Positions 278 through 47,505 of a stretch of 64,000 nucleotides of DNA are shown one piece after another (the first letter of the stretch is position 1; every line of letters begins with the position of its first letter). A model generated the notes under the pieces. It searched no databases and was not told the origin of the DNA. It was given only the letters and a program-made list of their open reading frames with translations. The stretch is taken from IMG/VR virus record IMGVR_UViG_3300043411_000942, positions 62,001 through 126,000 of that record; one strand, given 5' to 3'. The position numbers and the translations under genes were made by a program.

Positions 278-305
278 TTAAGGCCGTTACCCCAAAGGAC
301 GTAGG
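277..305 (+). promoter_or_regulatory. class-1 promoter GTTAAG-N17-CGTAGG
   Basis: ATG 313. Other + copies: 1373, 1702, 2020, 3171, 4359, 5196, 6828, 7432, 8996, 10084, 11161, 11834, 12129, 13753, 14059, 15700, 18642, 39895, 45213. Confidence 0.85.
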
Positions 306-312
306 TCTCTAC

Positions 313-426
313 ATGAACTACGATGACTGGAAAGCGACGGACCCCCGAGACACTGACCGCGACTATGACCTCGAAGGAGAGGAAGACCACTTCGAGATCG
401 AAAAAGACTACTCTGGTGAAGACTGA
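313..426 (+). CDS. small acidic protein (37 aa, MNYDDWKATDPRD...), not in ORF track
   Basis: ATG 7 nt after CGTAGG of promoter 277-305; open to TGA 424-426. Confidence 0.6.
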   Translation: MNYDDWKATDPRDTDRDYDLEGEEDHFEIEKDYSGED

Positions 427-530
427 TTCCGTGTGACCGTGTACTCCTGGGATACCCAACAGGTGACGGCTCTGCCTTAGGGAGCGTTAACAACGTCTAT
501 TCAACCAACCCGGCACGGGTGTAGAGTATT

Positions 531-1112
531 GGGTAAGTGCTGACACCTCGGAAAGACGGGGAAATTTCTTAACTCCTACTGGCGAGACACGTTAAGTGTC
601 GGGACACATGTGAACTAGAGTCACAGAACCAACGTAGGAGCTGTAGTCAACCTAGCAAGTCAAAACGTAGACTCCGGAAGGTAGCCAACCCTCTTCGGAC
701 GAGTCAGACCCAAGTAGGATGGCGAAGGGTAAAGCCGAGAGGCGAGCAAAACCCATGCCCCGAATTTGCTGCGGGGCGCTTTTCTTACTTTGAGAGTTGA
801 AATGCACATCCGTGACTGGGTTGCCGTAACCTGAGGGTCTCATCCTTCCTCTAGCCTCGGCAATTCGGAGCACACCCACAGGCCTGATGAACCTGGACGG
901 TTCGGTTCAAACCCGTGTGTAATGGGACACTAGCTCCCACGTCATGTGCTAGGGTTACGGGTGTGCTTTTCAACTTTCCAAGTAACTACAAGCACTTTTC
1001 TTCTTCATAGGTCTGGAAGCCAAGCGGTCTAGTTTGAGGAGACTGATCCTCTCTGTGAACTAGGACGTGGGGTCAACGCACGGGAAAACCTAGCCCTGCT
1101 TCCAGACCTATG
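531..1112 (+). ncRNA. candidate large structured ncRNA (possibly two domains, 534-997 and 1006-1112)
   Basis: No credible ORF. Stems: 535-541/991-997, 573-579/634-640, 712-719/783-790, 795-817/953-975 (23 positions, with G-U), 1006-1020/1098-1112 (15 bp perfect). GAAA/GAGA/UUCG loops. GGTGTA motif at 518-523. Confidence 0.65.
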
Positions 1113-1353
1113 GGGTAGGGGACTTCTTAACTACCGAGGATAAAAATGAGAGATATAGTTGATTGGACCGAAATGACACCAGAAGAGGAGGCGGAGTTGG
1201 CGGACAGAAGAATGAGGACGTGCCAGGCATGCATGGGCTTTGGTGGCCACGGAATCTCCGGCACAGCTCAGTGGTCCGAATGCTCCGCATGTGGCGGTAC
1301 TGGGGCACGACGCTCATCTAAGCACGGGAAAACCTAGCCCTGCTTTCAGACTT
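1078..1353 (+). repeat. 32-nt direct repeat (1078-1109 and 1322-1353, 2 mismatches) flanking a one-gene insert
   Basis: GCACGGGAAAACCTAGCCCTGCTT(C/T)CAGAC(C/T)T read at both positions. Confidence 0.9.
1146..1337 (+). CDS. small DnaJ-type zinc-finger protein
   Basis: CQACMGFGG and CSACGGTG (CxxCxGxG) repeats. Confidence 0.7.
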   Translation: MRDIVDWTEMTPEEEAELADRRMRTCQACMGFGGHGISGTAQWSECSACGGTGARRSSKHGKT

Positions 1354-1372: not shown

Positions 1373-1401
1373 GTTAAAGACACCTCCAAGCCGTACGTAG
1401 G
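1373..1401 (+). promoter_or_regulatory. class-1 promoter
   Basis: GTTAAA-N17-CGTAGG-N7-ATG. Confidence 0.85.
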
Positions 1402-1408
1402 TCTCTAT

Positions 1409-1651
1409 ATGAACGACTCAAGCTACCTCGCTCTCTGGCAAGCTGGAAACAACGAGGGGGACGGCTACATCCCCGACTTCGGAGGCGATGACGTGCATGC
1501 AGCTGCCGCAGCCTATGAGGGTGAGGGGGCCACCGTGATCCACTGGTCTACCACGGACGATGACGTGACGGTTCTGGACTACTACGGTGTAATGATCGCC
1601 ATTGGGGACGCTCACGGTCCTTGGGCTGTCACGATCGACCGGGGTATCTAA
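1409..1651 (+). CDS. hypothetical protein
   Basis: start moved to ATG 1409 behind promoter 1373-1401. Confidence 0.7.
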   Translation: MNDSSYLALWQAGNNEGDGYIPDFGGDDVHAAAAAYEGEGATVIHWSTTDDDVTVLDYYGVMIAIGDAHGPWAVTIDRGI

Positions 1652-3165: not shown

Positions 3166-3206
3166 AACCAGTTAAGAGCCACTCTCAAGAAAACGTAGGT
3201 CTCAAT

Positions 3207-3431
3207 ATGAGCAATCGTAAAGACTCCCAAGGCTTCGATACGAAGGTGACCTTTCTGGGAAAGGGTTACGGGGTTCGAGTTCTCCGAAACGGCAAAGTCG
3301 TGTCGGAAGCTACGGCACCTACAAAACTTCAAATCGGTTCGACCATCAAAGACATGCTCCGCATGATCGACAAGTGCGGGAACCCAAGCGAGATGGCTAG
3401 CTCCTCTCGCGACCGCAGAAAGACTGCTTGA
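3207..3431 (+). CDS. hypothetical protein
   Basis: start moved to ATG 3207 behind promoter 3171-3199. Confidence 0.7.
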   Translation: MSNRKDSQGFDTKVTFLGKGYGVRVLRNGKVVSEATAPTKLQIGSTIKDMLRMIDKCGNPSEMASSSRDRRKTA

Positions 3432-4132
3432 TGCTCTTTAGAGATATCCCGCCATTCACTAGGTCATCCAGCTACATGGTCAACGTGGGGCTGGATTACC
3501 TGTCTGCTCACTACGCTCGGTACGTCATACATTACGGGCTCGACGTGAATCCAGACTTCCAACGCAACTATGTCTGGACTCCGGAGCAAAAGACTCGATT
3601 CATGGAGTACTTCCTTCGAGGGGGTACGTCAGGGTTGGACATCTACGTGAACTCCCCAACGTTCCACGGTGGGAACTTGGGTCCAGAACACCCTGAGTCC
3701 TGGTGTGTTCTCGTGGACGGCAAGCAACGTCTGGACGCGGCCCTTGGGTTCCTCAACAACGAGGTCCCTGTTTTTGACGGACACTATTTCCGAGACTTCA
3801 CGGACAAGCCAAGGTTCACTCAGTGCAACTTTCGCTGGCATGTCAATGACTTGAAGACTCGCGAGGAGTGTCTTCAGTGGTACCTGGACCTCAACTCTGG
3901 TGGGACGGTCCACCAGCCTGAGGAGCTAGACAAGGTACGAGAGCTTCTGGCTAAGAATGAGCCGTACGCTAAGCCGTCTCACGAAACCATCCTAAGTCAG
4001 TCTCGACTCGACCGTCCATCGGTCCAGGAAGAGGTCCAACTGATTGCTGTAGAGCAGGAGAAGTACCGCCTCACGGCTGAAACGCGAAAGCAGAGCCCAC
4101 CTCCCATCAAAAAGAAAAGTAACAAGAGGTGA
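3428..4132 (+). CDS. DUF262 / ParB-like NTPase domain protein
   Basis: PDFQRNYVWT and VLVDGKQRL motifs. Confidence 0.85.
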   Translation: MMLFRDIPPFTRSSSYMVNVGLDYLSAHYARYVIHYGLDVNPDFQRNYVWTPEQKTRFMEYFLRGGTSGLDIYVNSPTFHGGNLGPEHPESWCVLVDGKQRLDAALGFLNNEVPVFDGHYFRDFTDKPRFTQCNFRWHVNDLKTREECLQWYLDLNSGGTVHQPEELDKVRELLAKNEPYAKPSHETILSQSRLDRPSVQEEVQLIAVEQEKYRLTAETRKQSPPPIKKKSNKR

Positions 4133-10352: not shown

Positions 10353-10425
10353 GGGACCTTAGCTCAGTTGGTAGAGCTGCGGACTTTTAATCCGTAGGTC
10401 GTGGGTTCAAGTCCCACAGGTCCCA
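10353..10425 (+). tRNA. trnK: tRNA-Lys(UUU), CCA not encoded
   Basis: GGGACCT/AGGTCCC acceptor; D arm GCTC-AGTTGGTA-GAGC; anticodon arm GCGGA-CTTTTAA-TCCGT; T arm GTGGG-TTCAAGT-CCCAC. Confidence 0.97.
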
Positions 10426-10580
10426 CTAACTGGATACTGTCTTAGCGAAGGTGTGCACCCTGAGCTATGATCGGACTCCAGCGAGGAGCTACCCGTTCCC
10501 ACGTAGATAGAGTGAGTCGCCCATCCCCCACTGGACTTGTTAAGCCCAACCGGATGGTCAACGACCCACTTAAACGGTAG

Positions 10581-10841: not shown

Positions 10842-11165
10842 ATGTCAAAAAAGAACGTGAGGCAGAAGTTCAGGGACTTGGTCTTCACTCGGGACAAGCA
10901 TGTTTGCCGGGTCTGTAGGGCCTTAGGTGAGCTAGATGCTCACCACATTACAGATCGCAACCTGATGCCGGGTGGGGGCTATGTGCCGGGGAACGGAATT
11001 TCCCTGTGCAAAGATTGTCACTTAAAGGCAGAGCATTTCCACTCAACAGGTGAGAGCTTGCCAGGGTTTTCTCCAGAGGACCTGTACCAACTAATCGGTT
11101 CAAGTTATGCCGAAGCTCTTGAAGCTTCGAGACTCCATGAGAGATTTAAGCACCTCTCTGGTTAA
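10842..11165 (+). CDS. HNH endonuclease
   Basis: RDKHVCRVC, LDAHHI, NGISLCKDCH. Confidence 0.88.
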   Translation: MSKKNVRQKFRDLVFTRDKHVCRVCRALGELDAHHITDRNLMPGGGYVPGNGISLCKDCHLKAEHFHSTGESLPGFSPEDLYQLIGSSYAEALEASRLHERFKHLSG

Positions 11166-20814: not shown

Positions 20815-21235
20815 TAGGTAATCTACTTAGCACATGCAGAATAGGTGCGGTTCGACACGCCTAGCCACTTTTGCAGTCTAATGTAGAGCTTCACCAAAGG
20901 GGTTGCCCCCCAACGCACGGGTCTAAAGTAGGAGCCGTAGTAAAATTCGTCTAACATCCGGGACTACTTACGCTAACTCCGCTTGGTAGTCAAATGCTAG
21001 CATGCAGAAAGGCCTACCCGTTTTTAGGTAGGCCTTCTTCCAGGCAGGTGAAGAGACTTGTGGTCTCTTCCGAGGAGCCTAACTCTTGATCAGAAAGCTA
21101 GGGTTCCTCTGCAAGCGGACTCCCTCCGCACGATTATATTCATTGAGGTCTCTTTCATCGCTACAAGGTTAACCTCAGGTAGGACCGAGTCCATACTCTA
21201 GAGGTGCTCTGGTTAAGGTGGCCAACCTCTCCAGT
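20815..21235 (-). ncRNA. candidate ~420-nt structured ncRNA with its own class-1 promoter
   Basis: No ORF over ~25 aa on the - strand; bracketed by promoters 21243-21271 and 20779-20807; hairpins 21009-21036, 21050-21070, GGGG-GCAA-CCCC at 20899-20910. Confidence 0.5.
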
Positions 21236-35150: not shown

Positions 35151-36311
35151 CTAAAATCTCGCCTGTTGGGCCAGGTCGATACACAGGCCGTCTATTCTGT
35201 GCAGGTCTGGCTTCTTAGGGAGCTTCGACACCTTAGCCAGCTCGGTTAGCTCCACGTCTTGCTTCGCTGCCCACTCGACAAGCTCGTAATAGTTCCAAGC
35301 CCCTGCTCGAATGCGTAGCAGGTCCTCAGCGTCCGGACGTCGCACAACAACCTTACCTTCAGTGAGGATTTCGCGGCACATTCGTAGGAGTCTCACTAGG
35401 TGCATGGCATGTTTCGTGTCGTACCCAAACTGCTCTTCTAGTTTCGCACGATCTGGATTGCGATTCTTCTTCCAATCTTGAAATTGCTGCCACTCTCGCA
35501 GTTTACTCGTGTAGCGTCGCTCCAAGTCGAGCAACTCAATGAAGTTCGTTGAAAACCCAAGGGAGTTCGCTGCTGCGTTCCAGGTCTTCTCTTCGACGTC
35601 TTTCCAGGACCACTTGGTGATCTCTAGCAGCCTACGGTAGAACTCGTCCTTAATGGATTGCCGGTTGGCTGGACCAAGCTCCTCTAGCTCGTGCCAATTC
35701 CACTCGTCCATGCGCTTATTGATTGTAGCGGAGGCAGCTGCAAGCTGATCTGCCGGGATAAGCGTGTGCTCAGGTAGATTAAACTCTGCTCGTGTTGGAG
35801 GCGCTACAGGAGGAGTCTTAATCCATCTGTAGTGAGTGTTGATTCTCTTGAGTTGTTGAGTCGCATACCCACTGAACGTGTGCTTTGCACGCTGAGAGAG
35901 GAACAGCTCGCGACTCCCCAGGAGGGTTGTCCCCAATGGGGACACGACCAGGTGGTCACTTTCGTCCGTGTAGAGGATCTCAAGAACGTTTGGATTACAC
36001 TCAGCCGCAAGTTTCATGAACTTGCGGAGTTCGAAGATCGTCAAGTCAGGCTCGGACTGAGTGACCTGCTCTACCGTGTTCAAAAACCCTAGGTAGTACT
36101 CACGCGGAGCGATCATGACTCCGCGTAGATCAAGATCGCTTGTAGGGAGGTTCGTCCCATAGGCGTGACTACCGTGACGAGTCAGGTAGATTGTCCGACT
36201 CGGTACCCACGATAAGTTACCTGAATACACGGGCTTCCAATCAAAGAGAAGCGTACTCTTGACTGGGATCAAGTCACTCCTTGGTGTATCCATGGAACCA
36301 CCCTTCTCCAC
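35151..36311 (-). CDS. Pol-beta-superfamily nucleotidyltransferase (Nuc-transf/YcgL-like)
   Basis: HGSHAYGTNLPTSDLDLRGV, NPNVLEIL, YDTKHAMHLVRLL. Confidence 0.9.
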   Translation of the reverse strand: MEKGGSMDTPRSDLIPVKSTLLFDWKPVYSGNLSWVPSRTIYLTRHGSHAYGTNLPTSDLDLRGVMIAPREYYLGFLNTVEQVTQSEPDLTIFELRKFMKLAAECNPNVLEILYTDESDHLVVSPLGTTLLGSRELFLSQRAKHTFSGYATQQLKRINTHYRWIKTPPVAPPTRAEFNLPEHTLIPADQLAAASATINKRMDEWNWHELEELGPANRQSIKDEFYRRLLEITKWSWKDVEEKTWNAAANSLGFSTNFIELLDLERRYTSKLREWQQFQDWKKNRNPDRAKLEEQFGYDTKHAMHLVRLLRMCREILTEGKVVVRRPDAEDLLRIRAGAWNYYELVEWAAKQDVELTELAKVSKLPKKPDLHRIDGLCIDLAQQARF

Positions 36312-42647: not shown

Positions 42648-43880
42648 TCACGAGATGCCCAAGTATCGCATAGCTACTCGCGTCGTTAGGGGTTCGGAGA
42701 ACTTACTCCCAAGTTCCACCTCAACCTGAGCTTCAAGGGCTTGGGGGTTCAAGGTAGGGTTTGCGAGTAGTTGTTGGCGTGCCACCTGGAGTACTACGTT
42801 TCTCTCTTTCGGGGGAATCGAGTACTTGGCGAACAGCCTCTGTTGGTCAACAGGAGGCTTCTTGAGAGCCTCTACAAGAGCTACACCGTCTGAGGGGGGT
42901 AGCGCAAGAAGAAGCACCCTCAGTCGCTGCTGAGCAGCTCTATCGAGGAATGATAGAGGGGTTCGGATAACCCAACCAAGGTCAAGCAAGTCCAGCAACA
43001 GCTCAGCTTGCTTGTCATTCACATTCCTGCCAAGGGCCGCAGCAAAACCTGGCTCTGCCTCCAACATCTCCTTGATAGCGTCCGACAACCCCAACTGCAC
43101 TAGCAGCTCAACGCTCTTCCTTGGGGCAGGTCCCCCCAGGATATCCCCTACGAGGATTGAGCGCACAGCATCCCACGGCATTTTCTTGAGGCTTGGAGCA
43201 TTCTTTCGAATGCTGGCTACCATGTCCGGAGGAATCTTGAATCCGTACTTCGCTACGAACTTGATTGCACGTAGCATTCGGGTGGGGTCGTCTGAGAAGG
43301 TCTTGTCTGGATTCACCGGGGTCTTGAGCAACCTCTCTTCGAGGTGCTGCTTCCCTAGTCCCGTGAGGTCCAAAACCTCAGCTCGATCTGGACCGTGCTC
43401 AAGATCCAGTAAGCGCCACAACAGCGTGTTGAAGGTGAACTCACGCCGCTTGAGGTCCTCTTCGATGGTCGCAGGTTCCACCATGTGGGGCTTGTAGCCC
43501 TTACCACCCTCTCCGCCATAACTCTCCTTACGAGCGTTGGCAATCTCGATTACCTCGCCCTTTAGGTCATGACCGTCAAGGATCCAAGATTCCGAGATAG
43601 AGAGGATTGCGACCCCGTACTGATTGGTCGTCAGGTTGCATCGAGCGGGAATGAACTCCGAAACCTTCTTGGCAAACCAATCCGAGTCTCGGCCCTTCCC
43701 AGCAGCAACGCTGTCAAATACAACGTCGATGTCCTTGATGGGCTCCTTGAGGATCCAGTTTCGGACTGCCCCGCCTACAACGTAGACGTTCTCTGCAACA
43801 CCCAAGGATCGTGCCACCTTGGACAGGAACTTCATCAGGGCGACAGATCGATCGTGTAGGGAAGATGCGGTAATCATCAT
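42648..43880 (-). CDS. cca: class II tRNA nucleotidyltransferase (CCA-adding / poly(A) polymerase family)
   Basis: YVVGGAVRN, KDIDVV, EDLKRREFTFN, FSDDPTRMLRAIKF; no HD domain; C-terminal RVAMRY. Confidence 0.88.
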   Translation of the reverse strand: MMITASSLHDRSVALMKFLSKVARSLGVAENVYVVGGAVRNWILKEPIKDIDVVFDSVAAGKGRDSDWFAKKVSEFIPARCNLTTNQYGVAILSISESWILDGHDLKGEVIEIANARKESYGGEGGKGYKPHMVEPATIEEDLKRREFTFNTLLWRLLDLEHGPDRAEVLDLTGLGKQHLEERLLKTPVNPDKTFSDDPTRMLRAIKFVAKYGFKIPPDMVASIRKNAPSLKKMPWDAVRSILVGDILGGPAPRKSVELLVQLGLSDAIKEMLEAEPGFAAALGRNVNDKQAELLLDLLDLGWVIRTPLSFLDRAAQQRLRVLLLALPPSDGVALVEALKKPPVDQQRLFAKYSIPPKERNVVLQVARQQLLANPTLNPQALEAQVEVELGSKFSEPLTTRVAMRYLGIS

Positions 43881-45602: not shown

Positions 45603-46286
45603 ATGCCTCTCAAAGACCCAGTCAAGCGCAAAAAGTACCTTCAAGAGTATAGAGCAAAAAGGCAGGCGGACGCCCCCATTATCCTATGTGGTTGTGGGTG
45701 CGGTACCTCGATCTACTCAGCCGATGGGAACGGAGTGCAAAGAGGGTTTGCATTTGGTCATAAAACTCCTCTCCCGGCTGATCACATCGCGAAACGAATT
45801 GCCAATGCAACTCTAATTCAGTGCGGGTGCGGGTGCGGAGAAACACTTCGCGACCGTAACAAACACGGAAACAAGCAATTGTATATCTATGGTCACGTTG
45901 CAAACAAGCAGTATGTGACGATTGCCCCACCGATTTCGTTACTGGCTCGCTCTGGAGGGGCTAAGCAGGTAAACCTTCGAGGCTTAAAGTGGGCTCGTAA
46001 GATTACGATACTAACCTACTACAGCGGAGGTCAGCCAACGTGCTCTTGTTGTGGGGAGACAGACCCTATTTTCCTAGCTTTAGATCACCTAGACGGTGGC
46101 GGCAACATGCACCGTAAGGCCACTAACACGAAGGGTGGGAGTGGTACTTACAATTGGATAGTAAAAGCGGGGTTCCCGCCTGGATTTAGAGTTCTTTGTC
46201 ACAACTGTAACATGGCATTTGGTGCTTACGGTTACTGCCCGCACTCTCCTCCGATACTAGATGGAGTCGAACAGGCAAACGGCTAG
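45603..46286 (+). CDS. HNH-type endonuclease with CGCGCG Zn repeats
   Basis: two CGCGCG modules; CSCCGE..LALDH..VLCHNCN. Confidence 0.78.
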   Translation: MPLKDPVKRKKYLQEYRAKRQADAPIILCGCGCGTSIYSADGNGVQRGFAFGHKTPLPADHIAKRIANATLIQCGCGCGETLRDRNKHGNKQLYIYGHVANKQYVTIAPPISLLARSGGAKQVNLRGLKWARKITILTYYSGGQPTCSCCGETDPIFLALDHLDGGGNMHRKATNTKGGSGTYNWIVKAGFPPGFRVLCHNCNMAFGAYGYCPHSPPILDGVEQANG

Positions 46287-46480: not shown

Positions 46481-46533
46481 CCTTAGTTTTCTCGTAGGTC
46501 TCCAAGTAAAGACGGATGAATTCTGGTGGTACT

Positions 46534-46551
46534 GGTGTAGCCATAGAGATG
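46534..46551 (+). promoter_or_regulatory. class-2 motif GGTGTA-N9-ATG
   Basis: same geometry at starts 14414(+), 20586(-), 34372(-), 38573(+), 44216(+); N10 at 45195(-); also 518-523 before the ncRNA. Confidence 0.6.
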
Positions 46552-47505
46552 CTCCATCCTAACCCTAAGATGCTGTTACGCATAGCCCAAGGTGACGCCT
46601 TTGGTATGGCGTGTGAATTTCGAACCGACAACCTGAAGGCAGCGTTGGAGTTCGATCGGTATATCCGTCATCCTGAGTGGGGTCCGGAAGCAGGTCATTA
46701 CACCGATGACACTCAGATGTCTATCGCAGTAGCCGAGAGCCTTATCCACCCACAAGGCCGTCGTCCTCCGAAATACGCACGCCCTGAAGACCTAACAAAA
46801 GAGGCTTTTGCTGAGGCCTTCGTCCAAGCATACAAGAGAGACCCACGACCTGGGTATGCGGTAAAGTTCCAGGCCTTCCTAGACTCAGTAAGCTCTGGTG
46901 CCGAATTCCTCTTGAAGATAAACCCGGAGTCAGATAAGAACGGTGCCGCAATGCGCTCCGTTCCGCTTGGCGTTATCTTACACGAACCCAATCTACTAGA
47001 GGTAGCTGCAACGCAAGCGAGCCTGACTCACAACACAGAGGGAGGTATTACCTCTTCTCAGATGGTAGCCCTTGCATCTAGGTTCGCCTTGTACGAGAGT
47101 GCTCCACTCACGGAGATTTTCGATTACATTGGAGACTGGCTACACCTGAGCAACCTACGGTGGGAGGGCGGTCCTGTAGTAGGACCTAACCTGGGGATGC
47201 TCACTGCAAGGGCAGCTATTACCCTAGTAATTGGTGAACCTAACTTACTGAGTATTGCAAAGAAGGCTCTTATCTGGGGTGGAGACACTGACTCTGTGCT
47301 AGCTATCGCCTGGGGTATTGCTAGTGCTCGAAAGGACGGAGCGGAGCTTCCCGACTTCTTCCATAGAGACCTAGAGAACGGACCTTACGGTCGAGACTAC
47401 CTAGCAGGGTTAGGTAGAGCCTTGATGGGTTACTTTGCTCCACCTGGGTTTGCTGCTGAGTTTGTTGTAAGCAAGAACGCGGTCTTGCCCCTCAAGAAGG
47501 ACTGA
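46549..47505 (+). CDS. ADP-ribosylglycohydrolase (ARH/DraG family)
   Basis: GDAFG, YTDDTQMS, NGAAMRSVP, GGDTDS; GGTGTA-N9-ATG. Confidence 0.92.
   Translation: MLHPNPKMLLRIAQGDAFGMACEFRTDNLKAALEFDRYIRHPEWGPEAGHYTDDTQMSIAVAESLIHPQGRRPPKYARPEDLTKEAFAEAFVQAYKRDPRPGYAVKFQAFLDSVSSGAEFLLKINPESDKNGAAMRSVPLGVILHEPNLLEVAATQASLTHNTEGGITSSQMVALASRFALYESAPLTEIFDYIGDWLHLSNLRWEGGPVVGPNLGMLTARAAITLVIGEPNLLSIAKKALIWGGDTDSVLAIAWGIASARKDGAELPDFFHRDLENGPYGRDYLAGLGRALMGYFAPPGFAAEFVVSKNAVLPLKKD

What the first reader, a model, noticed from the sequence alone, without database searches (positions are those of the whole stretch)
1078..1353. One-gene insert flanked by a 32-nt duplication of the ncRNA 3' end
Seen: the 32 nt at the 3' end of the ncRNA candidate (1078-1109) recur at 1322-1353 with two C>T changes, bracketing a 212-bp segment that holds a CxxCxGxG zinc-finger ORF. 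Established: elements integrating into tRNA/tmRNA genes duplicate the 3' end (attL/attR). Inference: the RNA gene is being used as an attachment site, which independently supports it being a real gene. No integrase is visible in this window.
Basis: partly seen in the sequence, partly recalled or inferred. Interest (0 to 1): 0.6.

Follow-up and report, generated by a model that had tools for sequence, protein, structure and literature searches.

The report
Old hairpin duplication flanking phage gene
The 32-base repeat is real, but it is an old partial copy of a folded RNA element sitting on either side of a small accessory zinc-finger gene in a very large phage, made by ordinary recombination rather than by an integrating element, so it is a modest curiosity.

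Summary
The repeat is confirmed: 1078-1109 and 1322-1353 agree at 30 of 32 bases and are the only two copies in the 233-kb phage record.

The attachment-site reading fails.
- Copy 1 is not the end of an RNA gene. It is one small arm (HP2, 1078-1099) plus ten bases of the 3' strand of the long basal stem of a Y-shaped RNA element of about 135 nt (HP, 992-1127). The stem covaries among relatives and continues past copy 1.
- Copy 2 is therefore the extra copy. It belongs to the zinc-finger gene unit; the gene's last five codons and its stop lie inside it.
- Every relative that carries the zinc-finger gene also carries both copies. Copy 2 has diverged to 25 of 32, so the duplication is old.
- One nested lineage (G001) lacks the gene and copy 2. 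It has a different gene flanked by an eroded 5' copy of HP and a full HP.
- No clean empty site was found, and no tyrosine recombinase in either record nor serine recombinase in G000. A RecA-type recombinase is present.
- All changes at pairing positions of copy 2 are compatible with G-U pairs, which suggests RNA-level constraint.

Best reading: HP is a recombination junction where gene units are gained and swapped.

The parts
313..426 (+). ORF37, a small conserved gene upstream of the RNA region. It starts at the phage's gene-start motif.
   Evidence: The identical protein is on at least 24 contigs.
430..991 (+). Structured non-coding RNA region made of separable modules: A about 436-538, B about 539-795, C about 796-991 (closed by a stem of about 26 bp). 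No known family matches.
   Evidence: No Rfam hit. The fold has z = -3.2. Compensatory pairs are seen in B and C. Modules are present or absent among relatives. The only sizeable ORF (minus strand) is frameshifted in L027.
992..1127 (+). HP, a Y-shaped RNA element. Basal stem 992-1018 pairs with 1100-1127; arm HP1 is 1019-1073; arm HP2 is 1078-1099.
   Evidence: Consensus fold of five lineages gives 50 pairs, 4 of them with changes on both sides. G001 has a perfect 25-bp basal stem. HP is single-copy in each genome by sequence and by covariance model.
1078..1109 (+). Repeat copy 1: arm HP2 plus the first 10 nt of the basal-stem 3' strand.
   Evidence: It shows 0-1 mismatch across all lineages.
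1136..1337 (+). Zinc-finger gene unit: Shine-Dalgarno-like GAGGA at 1136-1140 and ORF 1146-1337 (63 aa, two CxxCxGxG motifs).
   Evidence: in-frame 5-codon indel, cysteines conserved across four lineages. Weak DnaJ_CXXCXGXG match, E = 0.029, below Pfam's cut-off. The gene lacks the phage gene-start motif.
1322..1353 (+). Repeat copy 2: arm HP2' (1322-1343, with the stop codon in its loop) plus 10 nt that can still pair with the HP 5' strand.
   Evidence: It shows 2, 3 or 7 mismatches to copy 1 depending on lineage. All changes at pairing positions are C>T or A>G.
1395..1651 (+). Gene-start motif (1395-1417) and ORF80 (1409-1651), the conserved gene downstream of the variable unit.

Best explanation
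The 32-nt repeat is an old partial duplication of the 3' part of HP, a conserved Y-shaped RNA element of about 135 nt. HP closes a modular structured RNA region of about 700 nt in a very large phage.

Shown:
- The zinc-finger gene lies between the intact HP and the partial copy.
- The partial copy belongs to the gene unit and supplies the gene's last codons and its stop.

Inferred:
- The arrangement arose by general recombination, not site-specific integration. The most likely route is a single crossover between the genomic HP and an HP carried next to the gene on another molecule, either a co-infecting relative or a small circle. That gives HP-gene-HP.
- One copy then eroded. The same process, on the other side, explains G001: an eroded 5' HP copy, then ORF182, then a full HP.
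- The phage's RecA-type recombinase would supply the activity.
- The surviving copy 2 is not a neutral relic. It keeps the small HP2 hairpin and complementarity to the HP 5' strand through G-U-compatible changes only. It probably acts in the RNA, either as a 3' structure of the zinc-finger message or as an alternative pairing partner of the HP 5' strand.
For: - The repeat is real and unique in the genome.
- The HP structure covaries, and its basal stem continues past copy 1. G001 has a perfect 25-bp stem directly after its single copy.
- Of the contigs that span the locus, about 25 independent ones carry HP, the zinc-finger gene and both copies. The G001 type carries ORF182 instead. None has HP followed directly by ORF80.
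- Copy 2 diverges with lineage (2, 3 or 7 mismatches) while copy 1 is invariant.
- G001 is nested inside the zinc-finger-bearing lineages in the upstream flank, at 97.8% identity to the window. Its state is therefore derived.
- In G001 an eroded HP copy (14 of 17 bases of the 5' strand and linker against its own full HP, plus 14 of 15 bases of the HP1/HP2 linker and HP2 5' half) lies on the left of ORF181-position gene ORF182, and a full HP lies on the right.
- Seven site changes at pairing positions of copy 2 are all C>T or A>G. Unpaired positions show transversions. The coded residues change (H>Y, H>R, K>E, T>P), so protein constraint does not explain the pattern.
- The three changes in the G001 relic are G>A, which break pairs. 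A general C>T mutational bias is therefore unlikely.
- No tyrosine or serine recombinase was found. A RecA-family gene is present in both records.
- Several other short direct repeats lie close together in G000; for at least one pair (46052/46331) a single small open frame lies between the copies. I did not check these as genes.
- The filler after HP in G001 is a copy of a repeated non-coding element, so local shuffling is active.
Against: - HP is single-copy per genome, so it is not a dispersed recombination cassette.
- No donor context for the zinc-finger gene was found; the only relatives are in this phage group.
- Local folding of copy 2 is no more stable than shuffled sequence.
- The 5' strand never varies, so alternative pairing has no covariation test.
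- The G-U argument rests on only 7 site changes. My rough estimate is p about 0.01-0.03.
Confidence: 0.55

Rival explanations
1. First reader's model. A one-gene integrating element uses the RNA gene's 3' end as an attachment site, and the repeats are attL and attR made by a site-specific recombinase encoded elsewhere.
For: Direct repeats flank a single accessory gene. One lineage lacks the gene and the second copy. G000 is estimated to be only 49% complete, so a recombinase could lie outside the record.
Against: - No tRNA or tmRNA is at the site.
- No tyrosine or serine recombinase was found in G000, and no tyrosine recombinase in the 380-kb G001 record, which has terminal repeats.
- The HP stem continues after copy 1, not after copy 2.
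- No clean empty site was seen in about 27 contigs.
- The duplication predates lineage splits, and copy 2 is down to 25/32.
- L013 keeps both copies although it lacks the RNA.
Confidence: 0.05
2. Neutral scar. An illegitimate recombination or local duplication left a 32-nt relic that has no function and is slowly decaying.
For: Copy 2 diverges while copy 1 does not. The local fold of copy 2 is not unusually stable. No terminator was predicted there. L013 lacks the 5' strand, yet its copies are intact.
Against: All 7 changes at pairing positions preserve pairing, while nearby unpaired and coding positions take transversions and amino-acid changes. The comparable relic in G001 lost most of its length and took pair-breaking G>A changes. 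The L013 deletion is recent, since its flank is 100% identical to L039, so its intact copies say little.
Confidence: 0.25
3. RNA switch. The HP 5' strand (about 1006-1020) pairs either with copy 1, closing HP, or with copy 2, looping out the whole zinc-finger message. This would control processing or translation of the gene.
For: Copy 2 can form 13 consecutive pairs with the 5' strand in every lineage, and all its changes give G-U pairs (L027 by hand). The G-U pairs in the window's own basal stem point to function as plus-strand RNA.
Against: The minimum-energy fold uses copy 1. A 13-bp stem spanning about 330 nt competes poorly with a local stem of 25-28 bp. The invariant 5' strand gives no covariation. 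No expression data are available.
Confidence: 0.12

Closest known systems
PeSL regulatory cassettes of T4-type phages (Arbiol et al. 2010, PMC2839356; Comeau et al. 2014, PMC4122927)
   Same: A stem-loop-containing intergenic element lies as direct repeats on both sides of small genes of unknown function, in a variable region. Close relatives differ by insertion, deletion and replacement at these elements. General recombination between the elements, possibly through small circles, is the proposed mechanism.
   Different: HP is much larger (about 135 nt, Y-shaped) and single-copy per genome rather than dispersed. No sigma-70-type promoter or canonical terminator was predicted in it. It is the last domain of a larger structured RNA.
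Phage morons (accessory genes inserted between conserved genes)
   Same: The unit is one small gene that is present in some relatives and absent from another. It has its own Shine-Dalgarno-like signal instead of the phage's usual gene-start motif.
   Different: No promoter or terminator of its own was detected. The gene is ancestral to most of the clade, not a recent gain.
Integration into tRNA or tmRNA genes with duplication of the 3' end (attL/attR)
   Same: Direct repeats that include part of a structured RNA flank an accessory segment.
   Different: There is no tRNA or tmRNA and no integrase. The repeat is internal to the RNA element, not its 3' end. The element is intact only at the left copy. 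No empty site was found.
RNase III processing hairpins between genes of phage T7 early operons (from my own knowledge, not tested here)
   Same: Long imperfect stems lie between genes of one transcription unit, and related hairpins recur at several gene boundaries.
   Different: Cleavage was not tested. The phage encodes no RNase III. HP has a branched top.

Membership tests
tRNA/tmRNA-targeting integrative element (att duplication) | The target is a tRNA or tmRNA gene. | tested here: not met
   ARAGORN and Rfam find only tRNA-Lys at 10353-10426 and nothing at 300-1500.
tRNA/tmRNA-targeting integrative element (att duplication) | A tyrosine or serine recombinase lies in the element or the genome. 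| tested here: not met
   PF00589 and PF00239 are absent from G000, and PF00589 is absent from G001. G000 is an incomplete record, so absence there is not proof.
tRNA/tmRNA-targeting integrative element (att duplication) | The repeats abut the insert, and the original sequence resumes after the right-hand copy. | tested here: not met
   The HP basal stem resumes after copy 1 (1110-1127), not after copy 2.
tRNA/tmRNA-targeting integrative element (att duplication) | Empty-site alleles exist with one core copy. | tested here: not met
   None was found among about 27 contigs spanning the locus. G001 lacks the gene but carries other inserts. Reads could not be examined.
PeSL-type mobile regulatory cassette | The motif is dispersed in many copies through variable regions. 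| tested here: not met
   HP occurs once per genome plus the partial copy, by sequence and by covariance model.
PeSL-type mobile regulatory cassette | The motif combines a promoter with a terminator stem-loop. | tested here: inconclusive
   No sigma-70-type promoter or terminator was predicted at HP or copy 2. The phage may use other signals.
PeSL-type mobile regulatory cassette | The motif flanks small genes at which close relatives differ by insertion or replacement. | tested here: met
   The zinc-finger type and the ORF182 type share flanks that are 97.8% identical.
PeSL-type mobile regulatory cassette | Recombination between the flanking copies produces small circles. | not testable with these tools
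   This needs reads or PCR.
Rfam RNA families (including group I and II introns, GOLLD, ROOL, Y RNA) | The sequence scores against the family covariance model. | tested here: not met
   No relevant match up to E = 10 over 300-1500. No Ro/TROVE gene was found.
DnaJ-type zinc finger (Pfam PF00684) | Two CxxCxGxG motifs and a score over Pfam's cut-off. | tested here: inconclusive
   Both motifs are present and conserved, but the score is 15.1 bits against a cut-off of 32.7.

The most novel reading that the evidence does not exclude
The RNA region of about 700 nt (modules A, B, C and HP) may be a new class of large structured phage RNA. Its terminal Y-shaped domain would serve both as a docking point where gene units are gained and swapped, and as an RNA switch: its 5' strand would choose between two copies of its 3' strand and so gate the enclosed zinc-finger message.
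Probability: 0.12. Interest if true: 0.65.

Novelty: new variant of a known kind. Interest (0 to 1): 0.35.

Why it matters
This case shows how small accessory genes are gained and replaced in a very large uncultured phage without any integrase: a single folded RNA element acts as the recombination junction. It also documents a conserved, modular structured RNA of unknown family, with compensatory changes, that is worth its own study. For the scan, the lesson is that a direct repeat next to a structured RNA is not by itself evidence of an attachment site. Whether the fold continues through each copy is a quick test.

Tried and rejected
- **Known RNA families.** Rfam at gathering and permissive thresholds, and ARAGORN, gave nothing at the site.
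- **Intron reading.** L013 lacks window 415-1059 and reads ORF37 in frame into copy 1, which looks like an intron-less allele. I rejected this for three reasons: the L013 upstream flank is 100% identical to L039, which keeps module C and the full HP; the junction shows CTA/GGAC microhomology; and no intron model matches.
- **Y RNA / Ro idea.** No TROVE gene was found.
- **Phage RNase III.** None was found.
- **HP as a dispersed repeat.** No other copies were found by BLAST, regex or covariance model.
- **Wider relatives of the RNA.** Exact-pattern scans of IMG/VR found only G001. Three hits to a 17-mer were chance matches. Two scans each of the metagenome and genome collections found nothing.
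- **Relatives of the zinc-finger protein.** Only this phage group carries it. No PHROG matched.
- **Named phages.** No DNA match.
- **Terminator at copy 2.** Not predicted, and the local folds are no more stable than shuffles.

Full report
**Source.** The window is bases 62001-126000 of a single-contig virus record of 232,937 bp. IMG/VR classes the record as linear and about 49% complete. It has 52% G+C, many small genes, one tRNA-Lys in the window and eight HNH-domain matches. No named phage matches it at the DNA level. It is a very large uncultured phage. A close relative, G001, is a 379,936-bp record with terminal repeats.

**Observation.** Window 1078-1109 and 1322-1353 agree at 30 of 32 positions, differing by two C>T changes. 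They are the only copies in the genome even at 6 mismatches. About 7e-6 such pairs are expected by chance.
- The zinc-finger ORF (1146-1337) runs 16 nt into copy 2, so its last five codons and its stop are part of the repeat.
- Copy 1 is not the end of the RNA element (see next paragraph).

**What copy 1 is.** The stretch 992-1127 folds into a Y-shaped element that I call HP.
- A long basal stem pairs 992-1018 with 1100-1127.
- Arm HP1 is 1019-1073 and the small arm HP2 is 1078-1099.
- In a five-lineage alignment, 50 pairs are predicted and four show changes on both sides. The outer stem alternates between U-G, U-A and C-G pairs.
- In G001 the basal stem is a perfect 25-bp duplex.
- The G-U pairs in the window's version mean the structure is read on the plus strand as RNA.
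- The 32-nt repeat is therefore HP2 plus the first ten bases of the basal 3' strand, an internal piece of HP.
- HP occurs once per genome (plus the partial copy 2) by BLAST and by a covariance model.

**The RNA upstream.** Bases 430-991 have no conserved reading frame.
- The one sizeable ORF (minus strand) is frameshifted by a 1-nt deletion in L027, and its tail differs in other lineages.
- The region folds better than shuffled sequence, z = -3.2.
- Variable hairpins carry compensatory changes in modules B and C.
- It matches no Rfam family.
- It is modular. L027 and L035 lack about 436-538. L039 lacks about 450-790. L013 lacks everything from 415 to 1059.
- L013 and L039 have 100% identical upstream flanks, and the L013 junction shows microhomology. 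L013 is therefore a recent deletion, not an ancestral RNA-free or intron-free state.

**Relatives at the locus.** I reached relatives through homologues of the flanking proteins and tallied the contigs.
- About 25 independent contigs from many samples have HP, the zinc-finger gene and both repeat copies.
- The G001 type (at least two independent contigs) has no zinc-finger gene and no copy 2.
- No contig has HP followed directly by ORF80.
- Copy 1 has 0-1 mismatch everywhere. Copy 2 has 2 (window), 3 (L006 type, L013) or 7 (L027 and L035 types) mismatches.
- In the upstream flank, G001 is nested inside the zinc-finger-bearing lineages, at 97.8% identity to the window against 86-90% for L027 and L013.
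- By parsimony, the zinc-finger gene and copy 2 are ancestral to the group, and G001 is a later replacement.

**The G001 arrangement.** After module C comes a heavily eroded HP copy. It keeps 14 of 17 bases of the 5' strand and linker (against its own full HP) and 14 of 15 bases of the HP1/HP2 linker and HP2 5' half; the outer stem, HP1 and the 3' half are gone. Then comes a 182-aa ORF with no family match, then a full HP. After the full HP lies a filler of about 280 nt. The filler is a copy of a repeated non-coding element that is also found at G000:61054-61260 and on the minus strand at window 21114-21233. So two different genes each sit between a full HP and a partial HP, on opposite sides.

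**Why this is not an att duplication.**
- The site holds no tRNA or tmRNA.
- No tyrosine or serine recombinase was found.
- In a core-type duplication the original sequence should resume after the right-hand copy. Here the HP stem resumes after copy 1.
- The duplication is old and fixed.
- L013 keeps both copies without the RNA.

**Most likely origin (inference).** The pattern of a full element plus a decaying element around a gene is what a single homologous crossover at HP would leave. The crossover would be between the genome and a molecule carrying the gene next to an HP. One copy would then erode. This is the mechanism proposed for PeSL cassettes and their small circles in T4-type phages (PMC2839356). 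The phage has a RecA-family recombinase. Other closely spaced short direct repeats occur elsewhere in G000; for at least one pair a single small open frame lies between the copies, though I did not verify these as genes. Unlike PeSLs, HP is single-copy and has no predicted promoter or terminator.

**Is copy 2 a relic or a working part?**
- Across lineages, seven site changes fall at positions that pair in HP2' or that can pair with the HP 5' strand. All are C>T or A>G, which keep pairing through G-U (L027 read by hand).
- Unpaired positions take transversions.
- The five coded residues change freely (H>Y, H>R, K>E, T>P), so protein constraint does not explain the pattern.
- The G001 relic took three G>A changes that break pairs, so a simple C>T mutational bias is unlikely.
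- My rough estimate of chance for the copy-2 pattern is 0.01-0.03.
- Against a working role: the local fold of copy 2 is no more stable than shuffles, no terminator is predicted there, and the 5' strand never varies, so there is no covariation test for long-range pairing.
- I conclude that RNA-level constraint on copy 2 is likely but not proven. Whether it acts as a 3' structure of the message or as an alternative partner of the HP 5' strand is open.

**The zinc-finger gene.** It is a real coding gene. Four lineages keep the frame through a 5-codon indel and keep both CxxCxGxG motifs. Its only family signal is a sub-threshold DnaJ zinc-finger match. It has a Shine-Dalgarno-like GAGGA (1136-1140) instead of the phage's usual gene-start motif. 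Its function is unknown.

**Limits.** No expression data were available. The host is unknown.

Noticed in passing
window 299-321, 1395-1417, 1724-1746, 2042-2064, 3193-3215; about 50 sites in G000: A conserved motif of about 20 nt (core CGTAGGTCTCTA followed by the ATG) sits directly on the start codons of many small genes, on both strands. It contains a 4-bp palindrome, GTAG/CTAC. The zinc-finger gene and G001's ORF182 lack it. It could be a phage promoter giving nearly leaderless messages, or a translation signal.
   Followed up: partly
window 21114-21233 (minus strand); G000:C1:61054-61260; L001 1165-1440: A second repeated non-coding element (about 200 nt, conserved core, terminator-like hairpin at its end) is present in at least three places across G000 and G001. 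It has no Rfam match. In G001 one copy replaces the zinc-finger unit.
   Followed up: partly
window 436-991 compared with L027, L035, L039, L013: The structured RNA region is polymorphic by whole modules among close relatives. Module A is missing in two lineages, A and B in one, and everything in one. L006-type genomes carry a 9-nt tandem duplication inside module C.
   Followed up: yes
G000:C1 46052/46331, 183244/183571, 58557/60262, 195633/196771 (outside the window): Other direct repeats of 43-59 nt lie close together. At 46052/46331 a single small open frame lies between two copies that each hold the gene-start motif and a stem-loop; at 183244/183571 the copies overlap the ends of two neighbouring small open frames. 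These are raw ORFs, not checked as genes.
   Followed up: partly
window 35151-36311 (-), 42648-43880 (-), 46516-47505 (+), 3428-4132 (+), 10905-11033 (+): Pfam matches to RlaP (RNA repair), a CCA-adding / poly(A) polymerase head domain, ADP-ribosylglycohydrolase and the GmrSD N-terminal domain. One of eight HNH-domain matches lies near tRNA-Lys. Relatives carry a ribosomal L12-like gene nearby.
   Followed up: no
L013 2859-2993: In L013 the recent deletion fuses ORF37 in frame to copy 1. As a result, ORF37 and the zinc-finger gene there end with the same four residues and stop, both encoded by the repeat. I read this as a by-product of the deletion.
   Followed up: yes
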